Program-made: the position numbers and the translations under genes
NCBI RefSeq assembly: GCF_006345805.1
Contig: NC_043009.1
Coordinates: 12,090,001-12,154,000, forward strand
Origin: Octopus sinensis
Lineage: Eukaryota
DNA: 64,000 nucleotides
Direction of reading: 5' to 3'
Shown: positions 9,827 to 48,868 of the stretch, one piece after another
How positions within the stretch are numbered: position 1 is the stretch's first letter
How the letters are laid out: every line of letters begins with the position of its first letter
The notes under the pieces: model-generated
Told to the model about the DNA's origin: nothing
The model's database searches: none
What the model saw: only the letters and a program-made list of their open reading frames with translations

Positions 9827-9858
<32 letters not shown>

Positions 9859-9950: not shown

Positions 9951-10162
9951 AAACGTTATCATCAGTGATAAGAAAGCATAAATATAATTGAATGTAGCAG
10001 AATTTTAAATTTGTTGCTTGACAAAAAGGAAAGACATTTTAAACAAAAAAAGTACTTTACACACAAAAGCTGGAAGTAATCATATAGCGTTTTATTGCCT
10101 TAAAAGTGAGTGAGTTTTATATTAATTTGATGTGTTTATGTATTTATTTTACATAATTATTT

Positions 10163-17670: not shown

Positions 17671-18010
17671 ACGTATGATCATCTATGGTGTCCAAACGCT
17701 ATACTCGAGCATCAAGAAATATCTCTGTACATTATATTATACACATCCAGCAAAACAAGTTAAATCAATCTTTCTCATTTAACACCAAAATCATCGACAC
17801 GCCGCATATATGTACATATCTAAATTCATGTGTTTATACATGTACGCACACACGCCACCCCCCTAAAATGCTTGAATGTATGTTTGCATGTGTCAGTCTG
17901 AATGCATGTGCTTTTGATTTCAACTGTTTAGATGACTGTGTGTGCCAAATGTGATTTTAAGTAATAAATTAATTGAAAATCAAACCGTAATTTTGGTCGG
18001 TTAAATCACA

Positions 18011-18026
18011 ATTATGACGTCATAAT
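18011..18026. promoter_or_regulatory. CRE-type (TGACGTCA) site in a perfect 16-bp palindrome upstream of gene A
   Basis: ATTATGACGTCATAAT ~150 bp before the ATG; followed by Inr-like TCATTC at ~18057; identical upstream of gene B. Confidence 0.55.
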
Positions 18027-18178
18027 ACTGAAGTCAGAAAAACGCGATATTTTCCCTCATTCATTTGCGATACTTTGGCCATTGCTAACAGTTAACTTCT
18101 TGTAGGTTACTATTACAATCCATTGATTTGCGTTAATATATTTGCTAATAGCTTGTTTGTTTTAATAGATATCACCAA

Positions 18179-18407
18179 ATGTCCGACGTTCTACACCGCC
18201 CGGGCTTCCGTAAACGACTTCGTAAAGGAGCTCGAAACTTTTTCTCAAGATTAATACCCTGCGTACGACGACCGAAACTTGAAGACCCTTTGGAAGATGA
18301 CACAGATTTTTCTTCACCGTTATCATCAGACATCTCCTTGATGACAACTACAGAAGAAGATTTCCCGAGAAATCTCAATCAATCTGCTATAATTCCTCGT
18401 TGTGAGG
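18179..18407 (+). CDS. Gene A (unknown, lineage-specific-looking protein, 162 aa) coding exon 1
   Basis: ATG 18179; [76 protein letters not shown]; donor GAGG|gtgagt, phase 1; paralogous exon at 30195. Confidence 0.85.
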
Positions 18408-18951
18408 GTGAGTTTTGCTAAAAGTGTTTAAAATATATGCATAACACAAATGAGTTTTGTATTGTTTAATGTCTCTCTATATCAACCTATTTTTCTATCT
18501 ATCTGATTATGTATTTATCAATCTCACACATCTCTCAGTTTCTCTATTTCTCTTTATGTTGCTATAAGTTATTCAACAAGATTTCTATGTAGTCAAACTT
18601 AGACAAGTTATTCAACAAGATTTTCTAACATATCGCCGGTTGACACATGCATATATACCTACATAAGAACAATTAGACAGCTTAAGGCCGGTAAGAAAAT
18701 ATAACAGTAGGTCAGTTGAGTATTAAAGAACAGACAAAGGAGATCATTGGTAGACCCTTATCCGGGATCAATATCGACAGGAAGAGCTGTTCGTTAGACT
18801 TCAGAAAGTCAGATAACAGTCGACTGAATTTAATCCTTGTACGTATGTGTGTGTGTGTATACATACATACATAGTATGGCCGCGGCCATAGTGTGTGTAT
18901 ACATAGCATGGCTGCGGCCTTCGGGCTTAAACATTTTTAAGGATTTTAAGG

Positions 18952-19028
<77 letters not shown>

Positions 19029-19584
19029 GACCTTCGAAACACGGAGTAGACGAAGCAGGGGCAGCTGAAGAAGGGGAATATTCCTTGTGTTGTATGTCTT
19101 GTACTCTGTCTTTTCGTTGTTTGAAAAAAGTCCGTTTCCGTGGTTTTGTTTTTATGTTTTCGTTTCTCATTGTGTTCCACGTTTGTTTGGTGTCCTGTAC
19201 TTATATATGCATGTATATATACATATAGATGTAGGTATGTATATATATGTATGTATATATATGCATATGTTTTATTTATTATTTTGTTATGTGTAACTGG
19301 CATACACGTGTGTTACTTTGTAAATGACTGAGTGTGTCTGTCTGTGTGTGTGTAAGCCAGAAGCTGATGCTATGATTTGAGCCATGTTTTATAAGTATAC
19401 AATATATCTCATTCAAATAACACCTTTCCGTCCTATCTGTGTAAATATGTACGACAATGTGACGTAAAAAATCTGAGCGGGGCTAAACTTGCTAGATATA
19501 GCAACCAAAATCGCCCTCAAACTTCATCAGCTTCACTCACACATACATGTACGATTTCCATAATTATATTTGTATTGGTTTCAG

Positions 19585-19632
19585 ATTTTACCCCTATTGA
19601 CTACGACCAGTTTGAGCGAACATCTTGTCCAG
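19585..19632 (+). CDS. Gene A coding exon 2 (48 nt, phase 1-1)
   Basis: ttggtttcag|ATTTTACC...TGTCCAG|gtaaat; encodes DFTPIDYDQFERTSCP; same length and splice context as 31738-31785. Confidence 0.8.
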
Positions 19633-19799
19633 GTAAATATTCGACCTTCTTAAACTTCAGTTAACAAATTAATATACTCTGTTATGCATTAATATATATT
19701 TTCCTGTGTTGGTAAGAGAGTCTGAGTTATCTTTTCTTTTCGTATTTTTTGTTTTTGTTTGTAGTAATAGTTTTATCCATTGTCTGTTTTCTTTTCCAG

Positions 19800-19859
19800 A
19801 CTTACCCTCGATCGACACCGATTCCTTTGATGAAGAATTTCACGAACCATCAGAGTTTG
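19800..19859 (+). CDS. Gene A coding exon 3 (60 nt, phase 1-1)
   Basis: cttttccag|ACTTACCC...GAGTTTG|gtaagt; encodes DLPSIDTDSFDEEFHEPSEF; paralog 31964-32023. Confidence 0.85.
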
Positions 19860-20274
19860 GTAAGTTATTAATGCATTTTATCATTTTTTTACTATATATT
19901 ATAAACTACCTACTCGATTGTTTTGCATTTTCTGAATATTTAAATATGGTACATAGACATAGAGGATCGCGGTTTCGATTCCCAGACCGGGCGTTGTGTG
20001 TGTTTATTGAGCGAAAACACGACTACCGTAGCATGGCCGACTCAATCATGAATGTAATACCGCCAAGTACTATTTGAGAACAAACTTACAGCTTGTAGTG
20101 AATGATCGGGATATATCTATGCCTTGATAACTTAATGTCGTTGCGATACATATGTTCATGCATACATACTTTTCTCAAAATCCCTTTTCCATGTTTCTTT
20201 TTGTGTATAACATGAATTCTTATTTATTTGTTACTTTATTTATTTATTCATTTTATTTATTTGTTACTACATAG

Positions 20275-20426
20275 ATGATGGTAGCCAGACCGAAGAGGTC
20301 CCACCTTGTATTCCACTTATTGTATCCGACATCTTCATGCAAGCCAGTTCCGGTTTGCATCAAGTAGTACAGATCATCGTTTATTCTGTAAATGGTCATG
20401 TGACCATGTCCGTAAAACTTGGCTAG
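20275..20426 (+). CDS. Gene A coding exon 4 (stop TAG 20424-20426; exon continues to donor at 20431)
   Basis: tacatag|ATGATGG...CTTGGCTAGATCAG|gtaggt; encodes DDGSQTEEVPPCIPLIVSDIFMQASSGLHQVVQIIVYSVNGHVTMSVKLG*; spliced CDS 229+48+60+152=489 nt stays in frame. Confidence 0.85.
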
Positions 20427-20575
20427 ATCAGGTAGGTCATGATTGCATGTTTTGCAGTTTTAAAACACTACGATAAACTATTTAATTAGATATTATTTAT
20501 TCATCGATATGTTATATATATACATACAGGTATGGTGTCATTTTCATTTTTCTTTTTTTTTTGTTGTGGTTTCAG

Positions 20576-20885
20576 ATATGCCAAACACTTTGACCGCTGT
20601 GAAAATTGTACAGAGAAGCTGCCATACCTATACAGCACAAAACACTTGTCCTACGTTCCATTGAACCTGGAAATTCAGCGGAAATCCATAGGAGAACCGC
20701 TATACAGAAGAACACCATCAGAGTTATCCGGCCCCGGGTGCCAAATATGAAGAACACCCTCACCCTTTTTTGCTAAAGTGAAAAAATTTCGTAAATAAAA
20801 AAGAAAAAGGGATGCAACTATCGAGAGATAACCAAATGACTGAAAATTTATGGATAGTTTTTGTAATAAAAGATTAAAAATCATA
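20576..20885 (+). other. Gene A terminal (3' UTR) exon 5
   Basis: polypyrimidine tract + tttcag|ATATGCC; AATAAA at 20794 and 20865; homologous exons at 23870 and 33641; 3' end approximate. Confidence 0.7.
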
Positions 20886-21033
20886 TTCTTTTTATATTCA
20901 TTAAATATTACTCGCGGGAAAATAGCATCCGGATGGATACCAGTTAACTACTATAGATTTTGTATTATTTCATATTTTTGGATATGGAGGATTTCACCTA
21001 TGATATGCCATTTCCTAAGGTAAATTATTGGGG

Positions 21034-21103
<70 letters not shown>

Positions 21104-21140
21104 GCGCACACTTATGCACACGCACACAAACACAATAAGT

Positions 21141-21572
21141 CGGCGAGCTGGCAGAAACGTTAGCACGCCGGGCGTAATGCGTAGCCGTATTTTGTCTGCC
21201 GTTACGTTCTGAGTTCAAATTCCGCCAAGGTCGACTTTGCATTTCATCCTTTCGGGGTCGATAAATTAAGTACCAGTTACACACTGGGATCGATATAATC
21301 GACTTAACCCGTTTGTCTGTCCTTGTTTGTCCTCTCTGTGTTTAGCCCCTTGTGGGTAGTAAAGAAATAGGTAGTTCTGTGTTCAAATTCTGCCGAGGTC
21401 GACTTTGTCTTTCATCCTTTCGGGGTCGATAAATAAGTACAAGTGTTTCACTGGGGTCAATGTAATCGACTAAATCCCTTTGTCTGTCTTTGTTTGTCCC
21501 CGCTATGTTTAGCCTCTTGTGGGTAGTAAAGAAATAGGGATTTCGTTTGCCGTTACGTTCTGAGTTCAAATT
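21141..21572 (+). mobile_element. SINE-B multimer
   Basis: Head+body, second body, start of a third. Confidence 0.85.
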
Positions 21573-22099
21573 TCAAAAATTAGATTTTTATGGGCCCTAA
21601 AAGGTTGAAAGGCAGAGGCAAGCTTGACGAAATCTAAACTCAGAATGTAAAAAGGGACGAAATGCCGCTGAGCTTTTTGCCTGGCGTGCAAATATTAGCA
21701 GCAGAAAAAGGGTATTCGAAAGGATCTCTGTCAGTTACCATAGTTTCTGCATTATTTCGCGTTTCCTGACGTGAAAAAATACACATCGAACAGGTAATTC
21801 TTAATGTAAGTTGCTTGGGAGTATACACACACACACAGACAACACACACACACACACATACACACAGACGCACACACACAGACACAGACACACACAGCAT
21901 GCGCGCGCGTACCCACATCTATGTTTAAAAATGTTTTCAAACACATCGTTCTTAATATTTTTATACTAAGTTGTATTGGAAGATCCATGGTTGCAACCTC
22001 GTAACACTTCCAAGGCAAAACACTTTAAAAACGATTTGATAGTTGTTACAATTATATTACTGCTATAATTAGACGAAGAGAGACCGCACAATAAATGTG

Positions 22100-23420
22100 T
22101 TCCTCGCTCTTTGAGGGTGTTGACTTGCTGGCTGACAGCTGAGTTGACGAACTGGTAAACTCCGACTCTGTGATTCTGTTACTTTTTCTAGAAGGTTGAT
22201 AAAAGTGCAAAGAATCTTCTCAGAAACCTCAACTAAAAAGTCGATATGCATTTAAGGAAGAGTGAATGCTTTGTAGAGTTTGTTGCGGACAACAATAAAC
22301 GACAGTTTATTTGCTTTGCTACAAGTCTCAGCATTTATATATTAATGCTTATGTACAGCATTCATCCCCGTGCGTTACTATTTAGGTTATAGCTGCTTCA
22401 GTTGGGCCGTACAAAATCCTTTACTTTTTAGAAATAGGCATCAGTCATTAAGAGAAAAATAAATGAGATAGATTATGTACCTTCTAGCTGATTGTGTAAG
22501 GTGTATTTTCGTGATCCCCGTCCTGCTACATAGCAGCCCTCTGACGCTTTTGAGAATAAGCACCAACAATCTACGGAAGCCGCTGATGTAAAATTATTTC
22601 TCTAAATTTTCTTGATAGTTAGGCTTGCATTCTTGCAACGAAATGACTCTCACCTTATACAACAGAGCTCAAAGATATCGGCCACAGCTATACCTATTTC
22701 TTTACTACCCACAAGGGGCTAAACACAGAGAGGACAAACAAGGACAGACAAACGGATTAAGTCGATTATATCGACCCCAGTGCGCAACTGGTACTTATTT
22801 CTGCTGCGAGCTGGCAGAATCGTTAGCACGTTAGTTGAAATGCTTAGCAGTATTTCGTCTGCCGCTACGTTCTAAGTTCAAATTCCGCCGACGTCGACTT
22901 TGCCTTTCATCCTTTCGGGGTCGATTAAATAAGTACCAGTTACGCACTGGGGTCGATGTAATCGACTTAATCCGTGTGTCTGTCCTTTGTTTGCCCGCTC
23001 AATGTTTAGCCCTTTGTGGTTAATAAAGAAACAGGTACTTATTTAATCGACCCCGAAAAGATGATAGGCAAAGTCGACCTCGGCGGATCTTGAACTCAGA
23101 ACGCAACGGCAGACGATATACCGCTAAGCATTTCGCCCGGCGTGCTAACGTTTCTGCCAGCTCATCTAAAATTAACACATATCGAGGTAAAGAGAAAGTC
23201 TTCATGTGGATGACCGACTGAACAGAAATAGTTCCATGTCTCCTTCGTGATACAACCTGTCGGAGCGAAAAATAAGTACCATTGGAAATTGAACGTATAA
23301 CCGTGCCTCTAAAAGTTGATATTGCATTTCCCTTGCAGCACATTTCTGTAAGAAAGTTACCAATATGGTCAATTGCTACGTACAGTACATTATCGTTGTC
23401 TGTTATACAAGCGGCTAGAA
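22100..23420 (-). mobile_element. Possible very decayed piggyBac-like transposase, split by nested SINEs
   Basis: Weak motifs in the expected order (ITDN..., GTVIRS, SVIHM, SSYNL...NA, DFLVEVSEKIL); no TIR/TTAA located. Confidence 0.3.
22692..23162. mobile_element. SINE-B (+, 22801-23033) nested in SINE-B (-)
   Basis: 11-bp TSD GGTACTTATTT at 22790-22800 and 23034-23044. Confidence 0.9.
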
Positions 23421-23765
23421 AATATTTGAAAATATTATTACCTCTCCATTTAGCCAAATGCGTAATGCATACATGGTGGGACCCATGAGAAAGTAATTTA
23501 AAACCTTCAGAATATGTTAATACCAGGAAGTGAGTTGCTGGTGAAATATAACGGAATTCATTTCGGCGGCACCCAGAATAAATGCTACATTCGTATAGTC
23601 AAATAGTAACGGACAACCCGGAGACTCACTTAATGGTAACTATTCCTGACGATAATGAGAAATATACATCACTCATTTACCGCCTTGCTTATGTATGCAA
23701 ATATGCATCTATCCATCGATTTATCTGCCTATCTCTGTCTGTCTGTTTCTCTCTCTCTGCAAAAA

Positions 23766-24330
23766 TTTTGCAGTGTTAAAATACCACTATTTGATCCTAT
23801 GTGATTTATACATCGATATGTTATATATACACACAGGTTTGGTACAATTTTTATCTGCTTTGTTTTCAGATATGTCAAACCCTTTGACCGCTGTGAGGTT
23901 TGAATAGAGAAGCTGCCGTACCTATACAGCACAAAAGACTTGTCCTACGTTCTAATGAACCTGAATATTCAACAGTATAGCTGAACAGCTAAAGAGAACA
24001 CCATCAGAGTTATCCGGCCCAGGGTGCCAAATATGAAGAACAATCTGGCCCTTTTTGTTAAAGTTTAAAAAATTTTCGTAAATAAACGGAAAAGGAGATG
24101 CAACTATCTCGAAGAGATAACCGAATGACTGAAAACTCCTAGACGTATTTTAAATAAAAGATTAAAAATCATATCCTTTTTATTTATTTATTTGAATTAC
24201 TAGCAGAACATAGTATCTGAGGAGGGTGTCTGTTAGTTTTTGTCGTTATATCATTTTATATTTTGGGATCAGAAGAAATATTCTTCCGACATGCCATTAC
24301 CTAAACTTGGGAGATACTTGGGAGTACACA
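23766..24330 (+). pseudogene. Orphan third copy of the gene A/B 3' end (last intron tail + exon 5 + downstream flank)
   Basis: Closely matches 33537-34040 (gene B) incl. ttttcag|ATATGTC and AATAAA; no upstream coding exons found nearby. Confidence 0.7.
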
Positions 24331-24476
24331 CACACACATACGCACGCACGCACACACACGCACACACATACACACACACATACACACACACTCACACAAA
24401 CACAATCTCTCTTACACACTTACTCGCACATACATACACATAATCATAACTGTGTCAAGCGAGAGAGAGAGAGAGG

Positions 24477-24571
<95 letters not shown>

Positions 24572-24583
24572 AGCGAGAGAGAA

Positions 24584-24618
<35 letters not shown>

Positions 24619-24874
24619 AAGTGAAAGGACGTACAAAGGAAATCCTTGATATCGTATTCTTCTATTGGTTCTGTATCTTAAATATAATTTTACATGCACA
24701 CCCATGCGCACACTTGCGTGCACATACACACACACACACACATGGGTGTGTTGTTTGTGTTTTTGTCCATCTTTTATGCGACTACAAATCCAATACCCGC
24801 GCAAACATAATATTTCCTATTTCAATGGGTATAGATGGAGCACATATTTGGATAAAGAGAACAGCATTTTGTTT

Positions 24875-25052
24875 AATTTTTTTAAATTTGTTTAATTTTG
24901 TTTAATTTTGTTTAACTTTTAATTTTTTAAATTTGTTTGATTTTGTTTAATTTTGTTTAACTTTTGTTTAATTTTTCAAATTTGTTTGATTTTGTTTAAT
25001 TTTGTTTAACTTTTGTTTAATTTTTAAATTTGTTTAAATATTGTTTAATTTT
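24875..25052. repeat. AT-rich ~10-bp minisatellite (TTTTGTTTAA)
   Basis: Direct inspection. Confidence 0.85.
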
Positions 25053-25150
25053 TGAAATTCTCTCTTCCAATCGAAGATCTGAAAATTTTAGTGGTCAATT
25101 ATCTCCCTTCTACACTCTCTAGAGAAGAATGAGAGAATGCCAGAGAATGT

Positions 25151-25230
<80 letters not shown>

Positions 25231-25314
25231 AATAACGAGATAGAGGGATTCATGGAATGTTCTTTAAGCATACAATCACAACTCACTTTGAGCCAACCAA
25301 ATACAAAAAAACAA

Positions 25315-25897
25315 CAATGGTTTCAAGTTTTGGCACAAGGCCAGCAATTTCGGGGGAGAGGATAAGACGTATACATCGACCCCAGTGTTCAGCTAATACT
25401 TATTTCATTGACCCCGAAGGGACGAGAGGCAAAGTCGAACTCTGCGGAATTGAACATAGGACTTAAAGGCGGACGAGATGCCGCCGAACGTTTTATTCGG
25501 AGTGCTAACAATTCTGCCAGCTCGCCGTCATAGCAGGGACAAGAATATCAATAAGAACAATATCAACTATTGTTCAACAAGATCAATATCAACTAGATCA
25601 CTATATCAACAAGATCAATGTCAACTATAAAGGCAGCAGTTGGCAGAAACGTCAGCACGCCGGGCGAAATGCGTAGCCGTATTTCGTCTGCCGTTACGTT
25701 CTGAGTTCAAATTCCGCCGAGGTCGACTTTGCCTTTCATATTTTCGGGGTCGATAAATTAAGTACTATTTACGCACTGGGGTTGATGTATTGATGTAATC
25801 GACTTAATCCGTTTGTCTGTCCTTGTTTGTCCCCTCTGTGTTCATCTCCTTGTGGGTAGTAAAGAAATAGGTATTTCGTCTGCCGTTACGTTCTGAG
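25315..25897. mobile_element. Two SINE-B copies (25315-25530 minus with alternative tail; 25630-25897 plus)
   Basis: Consensus matches; the plus copy re-enters the body at the GGTAT junction. Confidence 0.8.
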
Positions 25898-26649
25898 TCG
25901 CGATATCTGGAATCTTCCAAATTTGTAAAAAGTCTTACGATTCAAAGGATGAACACTTGCACAACCGACGATGACAATTTCCTATTTGTTAAAACTTTGC
26001 CACCAGGAATGTGGCCAGTCAAAACTAAACTAAAACTAAGGGTAAGAATGAACACACACACACACAGATCCCCCCCCCCACTCAGCATCAGAAGTGAAGG
26101 CGCAGTGGACTGCTTATAAAATATCTTTGAAACGTTTTCTTCTACATTCATGCCGACTTCTCCAGCCTAAAACAGTAACGGGCTTATTTGTCCAATGATA
26201 CACAAGAAAAACACCTTTTGTTTACCAACGTAGCGTCGTATTCAGATCTGATTTTAAGAATACACCTTATACCACGTAGAATTTCGCAAACACGATCATA
26301 GTTGAAATTAATAAACAATACCACCGGCGAAAACAGCACTACAATAAGCTTTATAAAAATATGTTAGGTATTCCTTTAATTTTACTTGGACTCTACATTT
26401 AAACCATTATTTAAAACAGAAATGGCCTTTTTTGAAAAAACAGAAATGGTAAACCGTCGTGAAAACTAGCCAAAATCTGCCAGAAGAGACTTCGAAAATA
26501 ATGTAAACAAACCGCCCCCATTATTAAATTCTAGTGCCTCTCCAAATGTAGCTGAGTCAATATATTCAAGTTAGAAATATCCTGAAACCATAGCTCGTAG
26601 AAAACTTTTCTGCTTTTGCGAAACTATCGTTAAGCGATAGGCCATTCTT

Positions 26650-29380
26650 AAGATTAAGAAAAAAAAACCTAACAGCTCTAATGTTAAAAGTTATCAGTGA
26701 TGTCGCTGAAAAGCACATGGAATCATGTGATATTAATTTCTACAGTGAGGATATTAATATACTCTCATATACACAGCTGCTATCACTCTTAAGGAACACC
26801 TAGGAGAAATCTGCAGAATACATGGTAATGAAACTACTAAACGGAAGCAACCTAGATGAAAAACAGACCTTGAAGGAAACATCAACATTCTACGCCGCTA
26901 TATTTGATAGCAAACTATGATAATAAAATGTAAAAGGAATAATGAGTTTACACCTCATCAATTACATCTTATGAGCAAATTAACAAAACTCCATAGTAAT
27001 TCTTCACACCAAGGTCTTGAAGGAAGGTTAATTACACTAAAACACAAACTCAGTGCGCTGAGCGAAAGTCTTCGGTACTGTAGGCGAATTTTACTTCTAA
27101 CCGACTGACATTACATAAACATATGAGGAAGGAAAATGTTACCGTTGAGAAAGACCCCTCTCAAAGACATCTTGAATCATACTGATTGAAAGTCTTGAAC
27201 GAATAGAGGGAGCTCAAGCGCAATGCACCGTGGCTAAATGCAGTAAGGAGAGAAATCTGTGCCAACATCAACTGTAAAACATATGCAATTGACCCGGAAA
27301 CTTTCAGCATTTCTGTAGGCAAACATCCTAGTGGGAAGGCACCTGGAAGAGACCTAATAGCTGGATACTGATATAAAAGGCTGACATTTTACAGTTAACC
27401 ACTAATATGTATATTCAGAAGCACAATGGACGGTCAGATTTTTATACCAAATTGGCTTGCTATAGCACGGACAAATCCCGTATCCAAGAATGAAACTACC
27501 GAGTTGGCTGAAAACTATAGACCTATTGCTTGCCTAAATATTATATACAAATTGTACACAAGCTGCCTCAACCAATTCTTCCAGAATCACTATGGATCAG
27601 AGAATATAGTGACTGATGGGCAATCACTGTGCTTTTGGACTGATGAGCGGAATGGAATTTGTCCTAAAGAAATGTTCAAATTTGATTGTTTAACGGGAAA
27701 AAATCACTCTCCCAGATCCCACACCTGTTCATCAATGGTCTCATTATCTCACCTGTCCCACAGAAATAATGCTATAATTACCCAGATATTGATGAAAATA
27801 TATCATATGAACGTACTTTAAATAAATATAGAGTGACCCAAGAATATTATATCAGACTTAGAAAAATATGGCAGCCGGAAGTCTCCTCTAACGGCATGAC
27901 AATATTCCACATTTGGAATACTTGACTTGTCTGTTGAAGAAATCCACTCCATAGACGTGAAACCCGCAAGATACTGACATCAATTCCGAATCTCCACAGA
28001 AATAGTAGTAGGAGCACTCCGTCGGTGACGACGATGAGGGTCCCAGCTGATACGATCAACGGAACAGCTTGCTCATGTAATTAACGTGCAAATGGCTGAG
28101 CACTCCACAGACATGTGTACCCTTAACGTAGTTCTCGAGGAGATTCAGCGTGACACAGAGTGTGACAAGGCTGGCCCTTTGAAATACAAGTACAGAGAGA
28201 AACAGGAAGAAAGAGTGAGAGAAAGTTGTGGTGAAGAGTACAGCAGGGATCACCGCCATCCCCTGCCGAGCCTCGTGAGCTTTAGGTGTTTTCGCTCAAT
28301 CAAAAACACTCACAACGCCCGGTGTGGGAATCGAAAACCGCGATCCTATGCCCTAACCACTGGGCCATTGCGCCTCTACGACAGAAATAGTAATATCCAC
28401 AGGATCTACCTAAGAAGAGATAAAGGAGGTAGGGGCTTGAGATCAGTGCAGACAGCCTTTGAATGTCACAGTTTCTCTCAGACAGATCTTTAAATAACAG
28501 CAGCAAAAATAAACACATTTAATATGTTTATACTGAAAAGTGAAGAAAATAATGTCCTTCGTGTGGGCAGCGAGCCACTCAGAAAGTACTCTCTTCCTTA
28601 TGACCTCCCATACAAAAGATCCGGTCTAACATAAAAAAAAAGCTGGAGGTGAAATGCTCAGCATATACACACACACAAACGACCATGCATGGGTATGTTT
28701 GCAGTAGACTTGAAAAAAAAAACAGCAACTTTGACATGAAGCGAAGTCTTTCTTAGACTCGTGCCCGCTACATCACATCACATTTCCAAGACTATGCATT
28801 TGAAGACCAAAAAGTGGAGATTGTTAATAAATACCTAATAATACAAAAGAGACAGTGACGTCCTTGAGTACCAAGAGGCAACCGAAAATGTAGATTATGT
28901 TCTATTTCTGTAGGAGACGTGTCACTCATGTGATTAAAATGTCATCAAAGTACTACCAAAAATGTCATGAAGGTACTACCTCCCTATGGGACACGACGTT
29001 GTCATGAAAACGATATACATAACCATACGGAAAGAAGACTGCCATGGAATAAATTATAAAGAATACTCCGTTATTGAATTTTAGCACCAGGAATACTGGT
29101 GGAACATTCCTTTCAAAATATCTTCGAAGTGTAATCATAAGAGGCCAGATGCTGTTGCTTGGGGCAGACAAGGAAAAGTGTGTACCATCATAAAAGTCAG
29201 AGGTCATGCAGCTGTGAATAGCTCTTTGAAGATCAATGAGAAAGAAGATAACTATCGACATCCACTTCAAAACTTCCAGGTTCTATGTCCAGATTATGAA
29301 TTTATATTTATACCAATCATAATTGGTTTTGTAAGTAAATGCTTAACTGTCCGTCAAGATAAGCTTACAAGTCTGTAAGC
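26650..29380 (+). mobile_element. Decayed R4/Dong-clade (RLE) non-LTR retrotransposon
   Basis: KAPGRDLIAGY, ENYRPIACLNIIYKLYTSCL, IYLRRDKGGRGL, KCRLC, YYLPMGHDVV, RPD-like endonuclease and KEDNY...FIPIIIG motifs; many stops/frameshifts; central RT deleted. Confidence 0.85.
28008..28380 (-). mobile_element. SINE-C head + tail X, inserted in the R4 relic
   Basis: 12-bp TSD ACAGAAATAGTA at 27996-28007 and 28381-28392. Confidence 0.9.
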
Positions 29381-29629
29381 GGAATAGTGAAACTATGCAA
29401 GACTTTTCTCAGGTTTAAAATGTGATATTGTTTTTGTTATCAGTATTCCAGCGATGGATCTTTATATCTTTGTTAGAGACCAGCTCCGTCTCGAAAGGAA
29501 GAATTTAAATGATTAAAAATCCAAAAAGAATACACACACACACAATACATTTTATTATTCAAACAAGAAAATTTTGTACGTGTGAGTTTTTGTGTGGGCC
29601 ATTTCAGTTATATGTGAGTCTGTATGTTT

Positions 29630-29862
29630 TTTGTTTTTTTTACCCACAAGGGTCTAAACATAGAGGGGACAAACAAGGTCAGACAAACGGATTATGTTGA
29701 TTACATCGACCCCAGTGCGTAACTGGTACTTAATTTATTGACCCCGAAAGGATGAAAAGCAAAGTCGACCTCGGTGAAATTTGAACTCAGAACGTAACGG
29801 CACACGAAATACGGCTACACATTTCGCCCGGCGTGCTAACGTTTCTGCCAGGTCGTCGCCTT
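29630..29862 (-). mobile_element. SINE-B upstream of the gene B promoter
   Basis: Reverse-complement match. Confidence 0.9.
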
Positions 29863-30026
29863 GATGTAAGTCTGTATGTGTGACTATTGTAACTCTGTGT
29901 GTACATGTATGTATGAGTGCATGGCTGTGTTTGAAAGCATGTCCTTTTAGCAAACACTATGTGTCTTATGTTGTTAATAATAAATTAATTGAAATTCAAA
30001 ACGTAATTTTGGACGATTAAATCACA

Positions 30027-30042
30027 ATTATGACGTCATAAT
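30027..30042. promoter_or_regulatory. CRE-type palindrome upstream of gene B
   Basis: ATTATGACGTCATAAT, same position relative to the ATG as in gene A. Confidence 0.55.
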
Positions 30043-30194
30043 ACTGAAGTCAGAAAAACGCGATATTTTCCCTCATTCATTTGCGATACTTTGGCCATTG
30101 CTAACAGTTAACTTCTTGTAGGTTACTATTACAATCCATTGATTTGCGTTAATATATTTGCTAATAGCTTGTTTGTTTTAATCGATATAACCAA

Positions 30195-30420
30195 ATGTCC
30201 GACGTTCTACACCGCCCGGGCTTCCGCACACGACTTCGTAAAGGAGCTCGAAACTTTTTCTCAAGATTAATACCCTGCGTACGACGACCGAAACTTGAAG
30301 ACCCTTTGGAAGATGACACAGATTTTTCTTCACCGTTATCATCAGACATCTCCTTGATGACAACTACAGAAGAAGATTTCCCGAGAAATCTCAATCAATC
30401 TGCGATAGCTTGTAGAGAGG
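30195..30420 (+). CDS. Gene B (paralog of gene A, 161 aa) coding exon 1
   Basis: [75 protein letters not shown]; donor GAGG|gtgagt, phase 1. Confidence 0.85.
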
Positions 30421-30458
30421 GTGAGTTTTGTTGAAAACCGTTTGAAATATTTCTGTAC

Positions 30459-30459
<1 letters not shown>

Positions 30460-30514
<55 letters not shown>

Positions 30515-30523
30515 GTCTATCTG

Positions 30524-30569
<46 letters not shown>

Positions 30570-30613
30570 AATCAATCAATCAATCAATCAATCATCATCA
30601 ATCAATCAATCAT

Positions 30614-30679
<66 letters not shown>

Positions 30680-30934
30680 AGTTTATTTGCTTGTCTATTT
30701 AACTGTCTGTCTTCCTAACCAACCATTAAACTCTCTCTCTCTCTCCCTTTCTCTCTCTCTCTCCCTCTTTCTCTGTATATATGCATATGTACGTGCATTA
30801 TGTATAATGTATAATATATAAGACAGATTGGGCGTTCAAGCAACGATGGGAGCCTTAACGAGATTAATATCAGGGCCGAAACCTGTGATTTAAATGTCAC
30901 ACGAGGAGCGCATCAAATCGAACCTATATCGATG

Positions 30935-31013
<79 letters not shown>

Positions 31014-31095
31014 GTATGTATGTATGTATGTATGTATGTATGTATGTATGTATGTATGTATCTATGTATGTGTGTATATATATGTATATATATAT
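30460..31095. repeat. (TATC)n, (TC)n, (TA)n, (TATG)n arrays in gene B intron 1
   Basis: Direct inspection. Confidence 0.9.
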
Positions 31096-31104
31096 AGGGA
31101 TTAC

Positions 31105-31485
31105 GTCGACTATAAAGGGATTACGTCGACTTTGCTTTTCATCCTTTCGGGGTCAATAAATTAAGTACCAGTTACGCACTGGGTCGATGTAATCAACTTA
31201 TCCGTTTGTCTGTCCTTGTTTGTCCCCTCTATGCTTATATATATATATACATCAAGGCGGCGAGCTGGTAGAAACGTTAGCACGCCGGGCGAAATTCGTA
31301 GCCGTATTTCGTCTGTCGTTACGTTCCGAGTTCAAATTCCGCCGAGGTCGACTTTGCCTTTCATCCTTTCGGGGTCGATAAATTAAGTACCAGTTACGCA
31401 CTGGGGTCGATGTAGTCGACGTAATCCCTTTGTCTGTCCTTGTTTGTCCCCTCTGTGTTTAGCCCCTTGTGGGTAGTAAAGAAAT
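31105..31485 (+). mobile_element. SINE-B partial + full copy in gene B intron 1
   Basis: Full copy 31254-31485. Confidence 0.9.
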
Positions 31486-31737
31486 ATATATATATATATA
31501 TATATAACACTCCTGTGTGTTTGTGTGTGCAAACAAGCAAATAATCCTGCAATTTGTAGCCGTTAGATAAATAACATTTTCCCGTCATATCTATGGAAAT
31601 ATGTCTGACATTGGGAGGTAACCATCTTGATGGTGCTTCACGTGATGGATGTAGCAACCAAGCCCATCCCAAAACTTGATAAGAATCCCTCAAATGCACA
31701 TGAATAATTTTCATCATTGTTTTTGTGTTGCTTTCAG

Positions 31738-31785
31738 ATTCCCCACCTCGTGACTTTGACCAATGTGAACGAACTTCCTCTGAAG
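31738..31785 (+). CDS. Gene B coding exon 2 (48 nt)
   Basis: ttgctttcag|ATTCCCC...TCTGAAG|gtaaat; encodes DSPPRDFDQCERTSSE. Confidence 0.8.
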
Positions 31786-31963
31786 GTAAATATCAAAAAT
31801 ACATGGCCTTCTTAAATATCTGTGGACATATTATTATACTGTGCTATGTGTACGATGTGTGTGTGTGTGTGTGTGTGTTTGTGTGTGTTTGTGTGTGCCT
31901 GTACAACATTCAGAGTGCTTTTGTAGTAATATTCTTATCTTTTTGTCGTATTTCTGTTTCCAG

Positions 31964-32023
31964 ACATACCCACGACCCACACCGATCCTTGTGAAGAGTT
32001 CTTTGATGAACCATCATATTTTG
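31964..32023 (+). CDS. Gene B coding exon 3 (60 nt)
   Basis: tgtttccag|ACATACCC...TATTTTG|gtacgt; encodes DIPTTHTDPCEEFFDEPSYF. Confidence 0.85.
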
Positions 32024-32357
32024 GTACGTTATCTTTTCTGAACATTTACTTAGGACACACGCATACACACTTGTGTGTGTATATATATACACCAGTGTGT
32101 GTATATATATACACCAGTGTGTGTGTGTGTGTATATATATATATGTATATATATAACATACATATATATATATATATATATATAATATAATACTGATAGA
32201 GAGAGACAGAGAGACATACATACGTGAATACATACATACATACATACATACATACATACATACATACATACATACATACATACATACATACATACATACG
32301 TACATACAACTACGGTGATTAGGATTACAGCGGTTGCTCTATCTCTATCCAAGACTG

Positions 32358-32749
32358 TCGTGGAGGCGCAATGGCCCAGTGGTTAGGGCAACGGACTCGC
32401 GGTCATAGGATCACGGTTTCGATTCCCACACCGGGCGTTGTGAGTGTTTATTGAGCGAAAACACCTAAAGATCCACGAGTCTCCGGCAGAGGTGGTGCCG
32501 AACACTGCTGTACTCTTTCTCCACAACTTTCTCTTACTCTTTCTTCCTGATTCTGTTACATCTGTATTTTGAAGGGGCCAGCCTTGTCACACTCTGTGTC
32601 ACGCTGCGTCTCCCGGAGAACTACGTTAGGGGTACACGTGTCTGTGGAGTGCTCAGCCACGTGCACGTTAATTTCACGAGCAGGCTGTTCCGTTGATCAG
32701 ATCAACTGGAGCCCTCGTCGTCGCAACCGACGGAGAGCCACGAAACGAA
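32358..32749 (+). mobile_element. SINE-C (GGAGGCGCAATGGCCCAGTGG head) + tail X, in gene B intron 3
   Basis: 11-bp TSD ATCCAAGACTG at 32347-32357 and 32750-32760. Confidence 0.9.
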
Positions 32750-32851
32750 ATCCAAGACTGGCCTACTACTTCTTGAATCTGATATTTTGCACCAATCTGA
32801 AGAGCGTTTTTACAGTTTGTTGCGACTGATCATGATCTAGCTATATTTTGA

Positions 32852-33232
32852 TACTCTCTCTTTTACTCTTTTACTTGTTTCAGTCATTTGACTGCGGCCA
32901 TGCTGGAGCACCACCTTTAATCGAGCAACTCGATCCCTGGACTTATTCTTTTGTAAGCCCAGTACTTATTCTATCGGCCTCTTTTGCCAAACCGCTAAGT
33001 GACGGAGACGTAAACACACCAGCATCGGTTGTCAAGCAATGCTAGGGGGACAAACACAGACATAAACACACACACGCATATATATATATATATAATATAT
33101 ACATAAATACGACGGGCTTCTTTCAGTTTCCGTCTACCAAATCCACTCACAAGACTTTGGTCAGCCCGAGGCTATAGTAGAAGACACTTTCCCAAGGTGC
33201 CACGCAATGGGACTGAACCCGGAACCATGCGC
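32852..33232 (-). mobile_element. SINE-A in gene B intron 3
   Basis: Reverse-complement match; absent from the equivalent gene A intron. Confidence 0.9.
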
Positions 33233-33361
33233 CTATAACTTACTGTATTTGCAATACGTATTTACACGCGCATAGACTTTTCACAAAATACATATTCCAT
33301 GCTTCTTTTCGTGTGTAAAACGAATATCTATATATTGATGATTGTTTTTGTCACCGTATAG

Positions 33362-33513
33362 ATGATGCTAACCAAAACGAAGAGGACCCACCTTGTATTC
33401 CAATTATTGTATCCGACATCTTCATGCAAGCCAGTTCCGGTTTGCATCAAGTCGCCAACATCATCGTTTATTCTGTAAATGGTCATGTGACTATGTCTGT
33501 AACACTTGGCTAG
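33362..33513 (+). CDS. Gene B coding exon 4 (stop TAG 33511-33513; donor at 33518)
   Basis: cgtatag|ATGATGC...CTTGGCTAGATTAG|gtaagt; encodes DDANQNEEDPPCIPIIVSDIFMQASSGLHQVANIIVYSVNGHVTMSVTLG*. Confidence 0.85.
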
Positions 33514-33640
33514 ATTAGGTAAGTTATGATTGCATATTTTGCAGTGTTACAATACCACTATTTGATCCTATGTGATTTATACATCGATATGTTATACATA
33601 CACACAGGTTTGGTACAATTTTTATCTTCATTGTTTACAG

Positions 33641-33930
33641 ATATGTCAAGCACTTTGACCGCTGTGAGATTTGAATAGAGAAGCTGCCATACCTATACAG
33701 CACAAAAGACTTGTCCTACGTTCTAATGAACCTGAATATTCAACAGCATAGCTGAACAGCTAAAGAGAACACCATCAGAGTTATCCGGCCCAGGGTGCCA
33801 AATATGAAGAACACCCTGACCTTTTTTGTTAAGGTTAAACATTTTTTCGTAAATAAACGAAAAGGGGATGCAACTATCCGAATGACTGGAAACTTCTGGA
33901 CATATTTTTTATAAAAGATAAAAATCATAT
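33641..33930 (+). other. Gene B terminal (3' UTR) exon 5
   Basis: gtttacag|ATATGTC; AATAAA at 33852; homologous to 20576 and 23870; end approximate. Confidence 0.7.
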
Positions 33931-34148
33931 TCTTTTTTTTTACTTATTTATATAACTTGCAGAGTATGGTATCTGAGTATAGGTGTCTGCTAGTTTTCGA
34001 TTTTGCATAGTTTTCGATTTTAGGACCAGAAGAAATATTCTCTCCCTCACTATCTCTCCCTGTACTCCTCATATAATGTGACCGCGTGTGTATCGTTGGC
34101 GATTTTTTTCCTCCGTCTTCTCTTCCTTGGATTTTTCCTTTTCCTATT

Positions 34149-34181
34149 TTTCTGACGAAGAGCTCCGCTCGAAACGTTAAA
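34149..34181 (+). ncRNA. Minimal type I hammerhead ribozyme motif (Penelope-type)
   Basis: TTT-CTGACGA-A-GAGC-tcc-GCTC-GAAA-CGT-T-AAA: core, 4-bp stem II, palindromic ACGT stem III, U-A stem I. Confidence 0.55.
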
Positions 34182-34919
34182 TCTTCCTCCTTTCTTTCCT
34201 TTCCTGAGCGTCCAATAACACTATACTTGTTCCACGTCCTCGCGTTGTTGTGTTTTCTCTTTGTGTTTTCATGTTTGGATTAACTATATATATATATATA
34301 TATATATATAATTCATACACACATACACATACACACGCGCGCACACGCAGACACACACATACATACATATACAGATGTAACAGTATCCAGCATTTGAAAC
34401 CCTATCAGTTCAATAACCGGCGAAGACCACGGCATATGAAGTTTCCGTATTTGGTGGCGACTGTCTCCATCAGATGAATTTGAGACCCATATTTCAACCG
34501 TGCTTTTGTATTCGTGAGGTGTCAAGATTAATGGAAAATTCCTGGTTAGCTGGAGGCTATGCCGTTCCGACCTCGTGTTAAAAAGATTATCTTTCGCCAA
34601 GCACCAACACTTAACATTCTCACCTCTCTCCAAGCATGCATTCTCACACTGTAATAACTGGTTTACAGCATTGTAGCGTTTTTTTATTGTAATAACTGTA
34701 TATAAATCTGTAATGAAAGTGTGTGTGTATATGTTTGTGTGTCTGTGTTTGTCCCCCTAGCATTGCTTGACAACCGATTCTGGTGTGTTTACGTCCCCGT
34801 CACTTAGCGGTTCGGCAAAAGATAAGTCCCGGGGTCGATTTGCATGGCCGCAGTCAAATGACTGAAACAAGTAAAAGAGTTAAAGAGTAAAAGAGTATAT
34901 ATACATAAAAAAATAAATA

Positions 34920-35158
34920 CACCCTTTTAAAGCCTAGCCAGGCTCATGGGCCTAGTTTCCCAGTTTCTATGGCGTATGTGCTCCCCAGCTGGATGGGACG
35001 CCAGTCCATCGCAGCGTTACTCATTTTTGCCAGCTGAGTGGACTGGTGCAACGTGAAATGAAGTGTTTTGGAAACAACGCGTTGCCCGGTCCAGGAATCG
35101 AAACCACAATCTTACGATCATGATGCTGACACCCTATCCACTAAGCCACGCGCCTTCA
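34920..35158 (-). mobile_element. SINE-D head + tail Y
   Basis: Matches 44505-44752. Confidence 0.85.
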
Positions 35159-35384
35159 CACATATATATACATACATATATATAAATAAATGGCGTTAAG
35201 CGCTTAACTCCATTTATTTATTTATATATATTGTACGAAATATTTCACATCAACTCGGAGTTTCTACCTTTACAAACAGGGTGTTGCGTCCCTATTGCTT
35301 GTGTGATTTTTTAGCTGCCCTGGTAGCTGTCTGTTTATTTTTTTGCATGTTAATTGTAAACAAGGCAAAAATACACACATCCAT

Positions 35385-36700
<1,316 letters not shown>

Positions 36701-37890: not shown

Positions 37891-37902
37891 ATAGAAATAT
37901 AT

Positions 37903-38787: not shown

Positions 38788-38845
<58 letters not shown>

Positions 38846-48829: not shown

Positions 48830-48868
<39 letters not shown>

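What the first reader, a model, noticed from the sequence alone, without database searches (positions are those of the whole stretch)
18179..33930. Tandem pair of 5-exon orphan genes missed by the ORF track
Seen: two genes with identical architecture (coding segments 229/226, 48, 60, 152 nt plus a 3' UTR exon), canonical GT-AG sites and open spliced frames of 162 and 161 aa, although their introns carry different SINEs. The protein has a basic N-terminus ([20 protein letters not shown]), a long acidic Ser/Thr-rich probably disordered middle, and a conserved hydrophobic beta-like C-terminus (PPCIPxIVSDIFMQASSGLHQVxxIIVYSVNGHVTMSVxLG). I recognise no known family. Inference: a cephalopod-specific family under selection to stay intact; the N-terminus could be an NLS or a basic-amphipathic/palmitoylation membrane anchor.
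Basis: partly seen in the sequence, partly recalled or inferred. Interest (0 to 1): 0.8.

Follow-up and report, generated by a model that had tools for sequence, protein, structure and literature searches.

The report
Octopus-restricted small-protein gene pair
Two neighbouring, intact genes for ~160-residue proteins found so far only in octopuses; they belong to a small uncharacterised family whose best-conserved feature is a compact promoter with a perfect cAMP-response element, and both are missing or mis-modelled in the public Octopus sinensis annotation.

Summary
The window is Octopus sinensis chromosome CM016871.1 (about 12.09-12.15 Mb). Both genes have the stated exons (229/226, 48, 60, 152 nt coding, plus a 3'UTR exon), GT-AG at every intron, and open 162/161-aa frames.

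They are not singletons. RefSeq models with homologous junctions exist in O. bimaculoides (LOC106880409/LOC106880408, LOC106880393). Gene 2 is LOC118765860, truncated in RefSeq. Gene 1 has no gene call. O. vulgaris fuses the two into one chimeric model.

Exhaustive sequence and profile searches find only Octopus proteins: about 20 models at loci on at least four chromosomes. Pfam, PDB sequence search and Foldseek find nothing.

Architecture, from AlphaFold2 on two paralogues: a basic N-terminal helix with an invariant Pro-Cys, a roughly 90-residue acidic PEST/CK2-rich disordered linker, and a C-terminal three-strand beta-meander.

Between positional orthologues dN/dS is 0.38 (N-terminus 0.14), and paralogues evolve in concert.

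A 16-bp palindromic CRE (ATTATGACGTCATAAT) lies 150-165 bp upstream of the ATG in 10 of 11 family members examined.

Best reading, inferred: bZIP-inducible, short-lived intracellular adaptors. No expression data could be reached. Moderate interest.

The parts
17965..18178 (+). Gene 1 promoter / 5' block, about 214 bp, conserved between paralogues and species
   Evidence: 97% identical to the gene 2 block and 88-90% to O. bimaculoides copies (96% over the proximal 92 bp). Homology stops abruptly upstream of it.
18015..18022 (+). Perfect CRE TGACGTCA, the core of the 16-bp palindrome ATTATGACGTCATAAT, 164 bp before the ATG of gene 1
   Evidence: A site at the same position occurs in 10 of 11 family members in three species.
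18128..18149 (+). Conserved TTGCGTTAATATATTTGCTAAT box (TATA-like), 51 to 30 bp before the ATG of gene 1
   Evidence: Near-invariant in all paralogue promoters aligned. A role as a TATA box is inferred.
18179..18407 (+). Gene 1 coding exon 1 (229 nt): basic helix, PEST/CK2 region, NLNQSA motif
19585..19632 (+). Gene 1 coding exon 2 (48 nt, phase 1-1)
19800..19859 (+). Gene 1 coding exon 3 (60 nt, phase 1-1)
20275..20431 (+). Gene 1 exon 4: the C-terminal beta module, stop TAG at 20424-20426, then 5 nt of 3'UTR before a GT donor
   Evidence: AlphaFold2 strands at residues 124-161.
20576..20885 (+). Gene 1 predicted 3'UTR exon, with AATAAA at 20794 and 20865
   Evidence: Conserved AG acceptor and poly(A) signals in three copies. 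No RNA evidence.
23765..24287 (+). Relic of a lost middle copy: the tail of the last intron plus a 3'UTR exon (acceptor at 23870), with no coding exons
   Evidence: 87% identical to 33536-34045. Collinear with the 3' end of O. bimaculoides LOC106880409, whose gene body is absent here. tblastn finds no coding exons.
29981..30194 (+). Gene 2 promoter / 5' block
30031..30038 (+). Perfect CRE TGACGTCA, 164 bp before the ATG of gene 2
30144..30165 (+). Conserved TATA-like box of gene 2
30195..30420 (+). Gene 2 (LOC118765860) coding exon 1 (226 nt)
31738..31785 (+). Gene 2 coding exon 2 (48 nt)
31964..32023 (+). Gene 2 coding exon 3 (60 nt)
33362..33518 (+). Gene 2 exon 4, with stop TAG at 33511-33513
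33641..33930 (+). Gene 2 predicted 3'UTR exon, with AATAAA at 33852
   Evidence: No RNA evidence.

Best explanation
What it is (confidence about 0.9): two intact members of an Octopus-restricted multigene family of small intracellular proteins. They sit in a birth-and-death tandem array (gene 1, relic of a lost copy, gene 2) on O. sinensis chromosome CM016871.1.

How it works (inferred, about 0.25-0.3):
- Each gene is driven by a compact promoter of about 214 bp. Its fixed palindromic CRE (ATTATGACGTCATAAT), with a TATA-like box about 115 bp downstream, makes the whole family a co-regulated target of a CREB/ATF-type bZIP factor. That would make it stimulus-inducible through cAMP, Ca2+ or stress.
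- The product is a two-module protein joined by a disordered tether.
- The first module is an N-terminal basic amphipathic helix (residues about 10-29, net charge +9/+10 over residues 1-33) ending in an invariant Pro-Cys followed by basic residues.
- The second module is a C-terminal hydrophobic three-strand beta-meander (residues about 124-161, with an Asn-Gly turn).
- Between them lies an acidic linker of about 90 residues (net -22/-24) with a strong PEST segment and a TTTEE casein-kinase-2 cluster. This predicts phosphorylation-tuned, rapid turnover.
- I propose that the helix docks on acidic membranes, with Cys28 as an S-acylation site, or alternatively packs on the sheet. The beta module would self-associate or capture a partner. 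The protein would then act as a short-lived, inducible adaptor.

The single confidence figure given (0.45) is a compromise between these two levels.
For: Shown:
- Exon models and open reading frames.
- The window is identical to O. sinensis CM016871.1.
- RefSeq O. bimaculoides proteins reproduce the homologous junctions.
- Collinearity makes gene 2 the orthologue of LOC106880408 and the relic the orthologue of LOC106880409.
- dN/dS for gene 2 against LOC106880408 is 0.38 (p = 1e-4): N-terminus 0.14, C-terminus 0.32, middle 0.47.
- Only Octopus proteins are found among 1.84 billion representatives and in profile searches of 5.8 billion clusters.
- The motifs GFxxRLRxG at residue 9 and PC[VILF][KRT][KR] at residue 27 are present in all nine full-length members.
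- AlphaFold2 gives helix, disorder, then a three-strand sheet for gene 1 (pLDDT about 80 at both ends) and independently for a 26%-identical paralogue.
- Charge partition, and no transmembrane segment.
- PEST score 14.2 for residues 34-63, with scores above 5 in most paralogues.
- A CRE lies 150-165 bp upstream of the ATG in 10 of 11 members on at least four chromosomes in three species. The eleventh has TGACATCA.
- Across species the proximal promoter (96%) is better conserved than the coding sequence (about 85%).

Inferred from established knowledge: full CREs close to a TATA box mark cAMP-inducible promoters; PEST segments mark unstable proteins; Cys next to basic and hydrophobic residues is a common S-acylation context.
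Against: - No transcript, protein or localisation data could be reached. No paper mentions any family member.
- The helical hydrophobic moment of the N-terminus is unremarkable (0.44; 18% of shuffles reach it).
- Mean pLDDT is only 59, and the alignment behind the model has 11 sequences.
- The middle region evolves nearly neutrally in one orthologue pair (dN/dS 0.88).
- Coding exons 2-3 are no better conserved than the flanking introns between species.
- A binding-site match does not show factor occupancy, and the transcription start site is unknown.
Confidence: 0.45

Rival explanations
1. Nuclear acidic co-regulator. The basic N-terminus serves for nuclear import or nucleic-acid contact. The acidic, aromatic-studded linker (D[FY]DQ, [DE][DE]FF[DH]EPS[YE]FDD; DFDLF and DELFDEQIDFDD in LOC106883218) acts as an acidic activation or cofactor-binding domain.
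For: - The linker has a net charge of -22/-24, with conserved acidic-aromatic short motifs.
- Gene 1 carries K-[KR]-x-[KR].
- A CRE-driven, PEST-bearing protein fits an immediate-early transcription cofactor.
Against: - The NLS-like motif is absent from gene 2 and from all O. bimaculoides orthologues.
- There is no DNA-binding or known cofactor domain.
- The linker is the least constrained part (dN/dS 0.5-1.0).
- This reading does not explain the invariant Pro-Cys or the hydrophobic beta module.
Confidence: 0.15
2. Mitochondrial protein. Residues 1-33 are a cleavable amphipathic, Arg-rich presequence, and the mature acidic protein works inside mitochondria.
For: The N-terminus is basic (+9/+10), predicted helical, and poor in acidic residues in this subfamily.
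Against: - The N-terminus is the most strongly conserved part of the protein, with invariant G9, F10, R13, L14, G17, A18, P27 and C28 down to 26%-identical paralogues. Presequences are usually poorly conserved in sequence (established knowledge).
- Subfamily B carries D/E inside the helix.
- No presequence predictor was available.
Confidence: 0.08
3. Young, fast-evolving open reading frames with little or no protein-level function. They would be transcribed noise or loci on the way to pseudogenisation, kept similar only by gene conversion.
For: - The array shows birth and death. One copy is reduced to a 3' relic in O. sinensis, and the positional orthologue of gene 1 is a pseudogene with a stop codon in O. 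bimaculoides.
- Gene 1 differs from LOC118765758 by 5 non-synonymous and 1 synonymous changes.
- Exons 2-3 diverge as fast as introns.
- Gene conversion is evident.
Against: - Six intact copies in two species keep the frame, phases and splice sites.
- dN/dS is significantly below 1 for positional orthologues (0.38, p = 1e-4), and the N-terminus is at 0.14.
- Both end modules and the promoter motifs are retained in paralogues on other chromosomes at 26-48% identity.
Confidence: 0.07
4. Cargo or a domesticated gene of a mobile element or virus, which would explain the dispersed copies with sharp homology boundaries.
For: Copies lie on several chromosomes. The high-identity unit begins sharply at -214 bp.
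Against: - No transposase, reverse-transcriptase or viral domain is present, and there is no match in Pfam or BFVD.
- Introns are retained, so this is not retroposition.
- Copy positions are syntenic between species.
- There are only a dozen or so loci.
- The sharp boundary is what gene conversion of a promoter-plus-gene unit would give.
Confidence: 0.02

Closest known systems
RefSeq 'uncharacterized protein' models of Octopus bimaculoides: LOC106880408 (XP_014785809.1), LOC106880409 (XP_014785810.1), LOC106880393 (XP_014785795.1). More distant: LOC106883218 and LOC106872864.
   Same: Same family, with 66-76% identity to the close three. They share the four coding exons and phases, the N- and C-terminal motifs and the promoter block. 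LOC106880408 is the positional orthologue of gene 2.
   Different: The full-length O. sinensis products are not in public protein sets. Gene 1 has no gene call. Gene 2 is truncated. O. vulgaris CAI9731604.1 fuses the two genes.
Clade-restricted tandem gene arrays of coleoid cephalopods (reflectins, suckerins, unnamed arrays; Albertin et al. 2022, PMC9068888)
   Same: A lineage-restricted family arranged in small tandem arrays, with no similarity to proteins of other animals (for the general phenomenon).
   Different: No sequence relation to those families. It is small (about a dozen loci) and is an intracellular-looking disordered protein rather than a structural material protein. Tissue of expression is unknown.
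CRE/TATA-driven, PEST-bearing immediate-early gene products of animals (for example c-Fos, NR4A, ICER). This is a works-like comparison from established knowledge.
   Same: A full palindromic CRE within about 165 bp of the start codon, a TATA-like box, a small gene, and a strong PEST region predicting instability.
   Different: No bZIP, nuclear-receptor or other DNA-binding domain. Inducibility has not been shown.
GAP-43 / BASP1 / MARCKS-type acidic disordered proteins with a basic, acylated membrane-binding end
   Same: An overall acidic, disordered protein with a short basic N-terminal segment next to a Cys that could be S-acylated.
   Different: No Cys-Cys at positions 3-4, no Met-Gly myristoylation signal, no IQ motif and no Pfam match. 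It has an ordered C-terminal beta module that those proteins lack.
Bearded-family Notch antagonists of arthropods (recalled from memory as a lead)
   Same: Small proteins with an N-terminal basic amphipathic helix and no known domain. One paralogue (LOC118765758 / LOC106880393) is nested in an intron of a DSL/EGF Notch-ligand-like gene.
   Different: None of the defining motifs as I recall them (NxANE[KR]L, GTFFWT, DRWVQA) is present. The copies in this window are not in that host gene. The nesting is probably coincidental.

Membership tests
Unnamed Octopus family (LOC106880393/408/409-like) | N-terminal motif [GC]FxxRL[RH]x[GR] at residue 9 and [PL]C[VILF][KRT][KR] at residue 27 | tested here: met
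   Present at the same positions in gene 1, gene 2 and all seven other full-length members (alignments).
Unnamed Octopus family (LOC106880393/408/409-like) | C-terminal module PxxxP[LI][IV][VL]x D[IF][FY]... [IF][IF]V[YF]xx[ND]G[HN][IV]xMxV | tested here: met
   Predicted as a three-strand meander in two paralogues.
Unnamed Octopus family (LOC106880393/408/409-like) | Four coding exons with phase 1-1 internal exons and the stop within 0-5 nt of a further GT donor | tested here: met
   Subfamily B has one extra internal exon.
Unnamed Octopus family (LOC106880393/408/409-like) | Promoter block with ATTATGACGTCATAAT at -150 to -165, CTTGTAGGTTAC, and a TTGCGTTAATAWATTT box | tested here: met
Any curated protein family (Pfam-A) or solved structure | Significant profile, sequence or fold match | tested here: not met
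   Pfam gives 0 hits at E<=10. The PDB profile search has a best E of 0.24 in a low-complexity region. Foldseek on PDB has a best E of 0.18 with TM 0.2. Foldseek on BFVD has a best E of 0.02 with TM 0.14.
GAP-43 / neuromodulin | Cys3-Cys4 palmitoylation motif and an IQ calmodulin-binding motif | tested here: not met
   Regex search negative in all nine members. No Pfam match.
Bearded family | Motifs NxANE[KR]L, GTFFWT and DRW[VA]QA (as recalled from memory) | tested here: not met
   Only the generic basic N-terminal helix is shared.
CREB/ATF-regulated immediate-early genes (functional class) | Rapid, protein-synthesis-independent induction by cAMP/Ca2+, and factor occupancy at the CRE | not testable with these tools
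   Only the conserved site is shown. RNA-seq time courses and ChIP/CUT&RUN are needed.
S-acylated peripheral membrane proteins (functional class) | Thioester-linked acyl group on Cys28, and membrane localisation dependent on it | not testable with these tools
   Only the invariant Pro-Cys followed by basic residues is shown.
Transposable-element or virus-derived genes | Transposase, RT, integrase or capsid-like domain, or terminal repeats | tested here: not met
   Copies are syntenic between species and retain introns. Terminal repeats were not searched for specifically.

The most novel reading that the evidence does not exclude
The family is an octopus-lineage invention that was wired into the CREB/ATF stimulus-response programme. 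It would be a clade-specific set of immediate-early effector proteins, for instance activity-regulated in the octopus nervous system. It would be kept co-regulated across at least four chromosomes by an almost invariant 16-bp CRE palindrome, and kept homogeneous by gene conversion over megabase distances.
Probability: 0.12. Interest if true: 0.75.

Novelty: new member of a known kind. Interest (0 to 1): 0.4.

Why it matters
1. It corrects public annotation. One O. sinensis gene is missing, two are truncated, and one O. vulgaris model is a chimera of two genes. The correct full-length proteins are in no public protein set that was searched.

2. It defines a previously undescribed, apparently Octopus-restricted protein family with two conserved modules. 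This gives a concrete handle on lineage-restricted genes in cephalopods.

3. The promoter is better conserved than the protein, and it carries a fixed perfect CRE in paralogues that share only about a quarter of their residues. That makes a specific, cheap prediction of stimulus inducibility.

4. If that prediction holds, the promoter offers a compact 214-bp candidate reporter promoter for cephalopod work.

5. The locus is a clear example of birth-and-death evolution combined with long-range gene conversion.

Tried and rejected
- Pfam scan of both proteins at E<=10: nothing.
- Profile search against all PDB sequences: only low-complexity noise.
- Foldseek of the AlphaFold2 model against PDB and viral BFVD: nothing below E 0.01, and TM about 0.2.
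- Rfam over 17.5-34.5 kb: only sub-threshold microRNA-model hits on TG/TA microsatellites.
- tRNA scan: none.
- Literature search for ten LOC/XP identifiers: no paper.
- The idea that the pair is nested in a Notch-ligand (DSL/EGF) gene: true for the paralogue at 10.8 Mb and its O. bimaculoides orthologue, but not for this window, where no host gene is called.
- Bearded-family, GAP-43, CaaX, myristoylation, IQ and PP1 RVxF motifs: absent.
- A calcineurin PxIxIT-like match (PCIPII / PRIPII): present in only 4 of 9 members, so dropped.
- C-terminal tail-anchor or transmembrane reading: the maximum Kyte-Doolittle 19-residue mean is 1.15-1.19 in genes 1 and 2, and the segment contains an Asn-Gly turn predicted as a hairpin.
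- Pfam on nine other long ORFs of the window: nothing. Most long ORFs are microsatellite translations.
- My first exon coordinates for the O. bimaculoides loci were off by one and were corrected.

Full report
**1. Observation**

Reading the DNA and assembling the exons gives two gene models.
- Gene 1: 18179-18407, 19585-19632, 19800-19859, 20275-20431. The stop is at 20424-20426.
- Gene 2: 30195-30420, 31738-31785, 31964-32023, 33362-33518. The stop is at 33511-33513.

The exon lengths are 229/226, 48, 60 and 152 coding nt. All introns are GT-AG. The products are 162 and 161 aa and 83% identical.

Five nucleotides after each stop there is a further GT donor. About 145/123 bp later there is a conserved CAG|ATATG acceptor, followed by roughly 300 bp with AATAAA signals. 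This is the proposed 3'UTR exon, and it rests on conservation only. tblastn finds no further coding copy in the window.

**2. Where the window comes from and what is annotated there**

A locus fetched for the RefSeq protein LOC118765860 is Octopus sinensis GCA_006345805.1, CM016871.1:12110195-12131926. It is 100% identical to window 20195-41926. The window is therefore about 12,090,001-12,154,000 of that chromosome.

The public annotation of the family is poor in two species.
- Gene 2 is LOC118765860, but the public model (116 aa) reads into intron 2.
- No gene call overlaps the 3' part of gene 1 in that locus.
- The exact full-length proteins of gene 1, gene 2 and a third O. sinensis copy are absent from a collection of about 15 billion proteins.
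- In O. vulgaris, CAI9731604.1 is a chimera of gene 1 exons 1 and 3 with gene 2 exons 2-4.

In O. bimaculoides, by contrast, RefSeq has full-length models: LOC106880393 (163 aa), LOC106880409 (164 aa, plus an isoform lacking exon 3) and LOC106880408 (164 aa). My exon reconstructions at the homologous junctions translate exactly to these proteins. This is independent support for the splice pattern.

**3. Family and taxonomic range**

Three searches were run: a single-sequence search, an exhaustive HMMER profile search of 1.84 billion representatives, and two profile searches of 5.8 billion clusters. Together with cluster look-ups they return about 20 models. All are from O. bimaculoides, O. sinensis or O. 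vulgaris, or from short unnamed Logan contigs that look genomic.

There are at least three subfamilies, on at least four chromosomes or scaffolds. Identity to gene 1 falls to 26%.

Conserved across all of them:
- an N-terminal block (M[ST]..V...GFxxRLRxGA........PC[VILF]++);
- an S-x-MTTTEE-like cluster;
- N[LR]N[QE][SC]A at the end of exon 1;
- a C-terminal block (P..P[LI][IV][VL].D[IF][FY] ... [IF][IF]V[YF]..NG[HN][IV].M.V).

Nothing outside Octopus was found. How well other cephalopods are represented in these databases is unknown to me, so 'Octopus-restricted' means 'as far as could be searched'.

**4. No known family**

Every comparison with described families was negative.
- Pfam gave no hit at E<=10.
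- A profile search of all PDB sequences gave only a low-complexity match at E 0.24.
- Foldseek of the model against PDB and BFVD gave nothing significant.
- Rfam and tRNA scans found nothing real.
- No paper in the library mentions any of ten identifiers.
- Clade-restricted gene arrays are a known feature of coleoid genomes (PMC9068888).

**5. Protein architecture**

AlphaFold2 with the 11-sequence family alignment predicts, for gene 1:
- a helix at residues 10-29 (pLDDT about 80);
- disorder at 32-110 (pLDDT below 50);
- three antiparallel strands at 124-136, 139-151 and 154-161 (pLDDT 76-87).

A paralogue with 26% identity gives the same layout, at lower confidence.

Residues 1-33 carry +9/+10, the linker -22/-24, and the last 42 residues about 0. 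There is no transmembrane-grade hydrophobic stretch. Residues 34-63 score 14.2 in a PEST-find calculation, where 5 is the usual threshold, and most paralogues have a segment scoring above 5. T56-T58 are three consecutive [ST]xx[DE] sites.

All internal exons are phase 1-1. This is why public models that skip exon 2 or exon 3 stay in frame.

**6. Selection and evolution**

*Synteny.* The two species carry orthologous three-position arrays.
- O. bimaculoides has pseudogene - LOC106880409 - LOC106880408, all in one orientation.
- The LOC106880408 locus is collinear with window 25318-38836, so gene 2 is its orthologue.
- The sequence 3' of LOC106880409 matches window 23766-24323. In the window only a 3' relic of that copy (23765-24287) remains.
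- The positional orthologue of gene 1 in O. bimaculoides is a pseudogene with a stop in exon 1.

*Selection (Nei-Gojobori).*
- Gene 2 against LOC106880408: dN/dS 0.38 (Fisher p = 1e-4). The N-terminus is 0.14, the middle 0.47 and the C-terminus 0.32.
- LOC118765758 against LOC106880393: 0.62 overall, with the middle at 0.88.
- Constraint is therefore real but concentrated at the two ends.
- Between species, exons 2-3 (77-83% identical) are no better conserved than neighbouring introns.

*Concerted evolution.*
- Paralogues within a species are more alike than positional orthologues. Gene 1 and LOC118765758 are 97.5% identical, and LOC106880393 and LOC106880408 are 90.7%. Gene 2 and LOC106880408 are only 72.5%.
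- Gene 1 and LOC118765758 lie 1.3 Mb apart in opposite orientation. LOC118765758 sits inside an intron of a DSL/EGF gene. The two are 98-99% identical through introns 2 and 3, but unrelated upstream of -214.
- Gene 1 and gene 2 are 97% identical in the promoter and exon 1. They then drop to random-level identity (55%) in intron 1.
- I read this as gene conversion of a promoter-plus-gene unit over megabase distances.

**7. Promoter**

The 214 bp before the ATG form a sharply bounded block. It is 97% identical between gene 1 and gene 2, and 88-90% identical to O. bimaculoides copies (96% over the proximal 92 bp). That is better conserved than the coding sequence, which is about 85%.

The block contains TGACGTCA at 18015-18022 and 30031-30038. 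The window holds three such sites, against 0.92 expected by chance.

In alignments and scans of eleven family members from three species, the extended palindrome ATTATGACGTCATAAT lies 150-165 bp before the ATG in ten. The eleventh has TGACATCA. These eleven include paralogues with only 26-48% protein identity.

CTTGTAGGTTAC and a TTGCGTTAATAWATTT (TATA-like) box at -51 to -30 are equally persistent. The start codons have A at -3.

That the site is bound by a CREB/ATF-type bZIP factor, and that the genes are inducible, is inference from the well-established properties of full CREs near TATA boxes.

**8. Explanation and rivals**

*What it is:* two intact members of an Octopus-restricted multigene family in a birth-and-death tandem array. 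I hold this at about 0.9.

*How it works:* this is inferred, at about 0.25-0.3. The genes would be bZIP-inducible. They would encode short-lived (PEST, CK2-tunable) intracellular adaptors. The basic helix with invariant Pro-Cys would dock on acidic membranes, possibly S-acylated, or pack on the C-terminal sheet. The beta-meander would self-associate or bind a partner.

*Rivals:*
- a nuclear acidic cofactor (0.15);
- a mitochondrial presequence protein (0.08);
- functionless young ORFs (0.07);
- mobile-element cargo (0.02).

The main weakness is the complete lack of expression, localisation or interaction data.

**9. Verdict**

The pair is not an isolated orphan, however. It belongs to a small family already present, unnamed and partly mis-modelled, in public annotations.

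The new points are these:
- the correct O. sinensis models;
- the definition of the family and its two-module architecture;
- the concerted evolution;
- the family-wide CRE promoter.

Interest is moderate. It would rise considerably if stimulus induction were shown.

Noticed in passing
window 23765-24287: A stand-alone copy of the last-intron tail plus the 3'UTR exon, with no coding exons. It is 87% identical to gene 2's 3' end. It is collinear with the 3' end of O. bimaculoides LOC106880409, so about 6.6 kb holding that copy's promoter and exons 1-4 is missing in O. sinensis. It could also serve as an alternative terminal exon for gene 1.
   Followed up: partly
L002 (O. sinensis CM016871.1, about 10.80 Mb) and L001 (O. 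bimaculoides CM046613.1, about 19.08 Mb): A third copy (LOC118765758 / LOC106880393) lies inside an intron, on the opposite strand, of a gene of about 1055 aa with DSL and EGF domains (Delta/Jagged-like) in both species. The O. sinensis RefSeq model is truncated (111 aa), although all four coding exons are intact.
   Followed up: partly
O. vulgaris CAI9731604.1 (P0018) compared with window genes 1 and 2: The O. vulgaris annotation fuses gene 1 exons 1 and 3 to gene 2 exons 2-4 in one 182-aa model. This is either a prediction artefact or a sign of read-through transcripts across the 12-kb spacer.
   Followed up: no
L004 1540-2971 (O. bimaculoides): The positional orthologue of gene 1 is a pseudogene, with an in-frame stop in exon 1 and only fragments of the last exon. 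Its residual sequence ([13 protein letters not shown]) resembles the O. sinensis state more than the functional O. bimaculoides copies do. This fits gene conversion among the live copies.
   Followed up: partly
L001 about 9700-9975 and 11278-11412: The O. bimaculoides assembly has a run of N directly upstream of LOC106880393 exon 1, and a second partial exon 1 with an intact promoter 1.3 kb downstream. This is probably a local assembly duplication around a gap.
   Followed up: no
window 31125-31486, 32360-32740, 32858-33229 (gene 2 introns), with many other copies in the window: Three families of short interspersed repeats, at 77-95% identity, with roughly 4 to 25 further copies or fragments each in the 64 kb. 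The 32360-32450 part looks like a tRNA-derived head, but ARAGORN and Rfam call nothing.
   Followed up: partly
window 26629-29627: An intergenic block of about 3 kb, 88-94% identical to O. bimaculoides. That is better than the surrounding sequence. It contains two ORFs of 131 and 135 aa with no Pfam match. It could be an old shared repeat or a conserved non-coding region.
   Followed up: partly
window 36995-37002: A third perfect TGACGTCA, about 3 kb downstream of gene 2. It is not next to any family exon. tblastn with both proteins finds nothing nearby.
   Followed up: no
window 48000-52500: A strong positive GC skew (up to +0.40) over several kb of CATA/TACA-type and CT-rich microsatellite arrays. 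This produces long spurious ORFs on both strands.
   Followed up: no
L012 (O. sinensis scaffold VCDQ01005617.1): Subfamily-B members LOC118761728 and LOC118761726 sit head-to-head about 5 kb apart with almost identical promoters. This points to a recent inverted duplication. A further uncharacterised 225-aa gene is called directly downstream.
   Followed up: no
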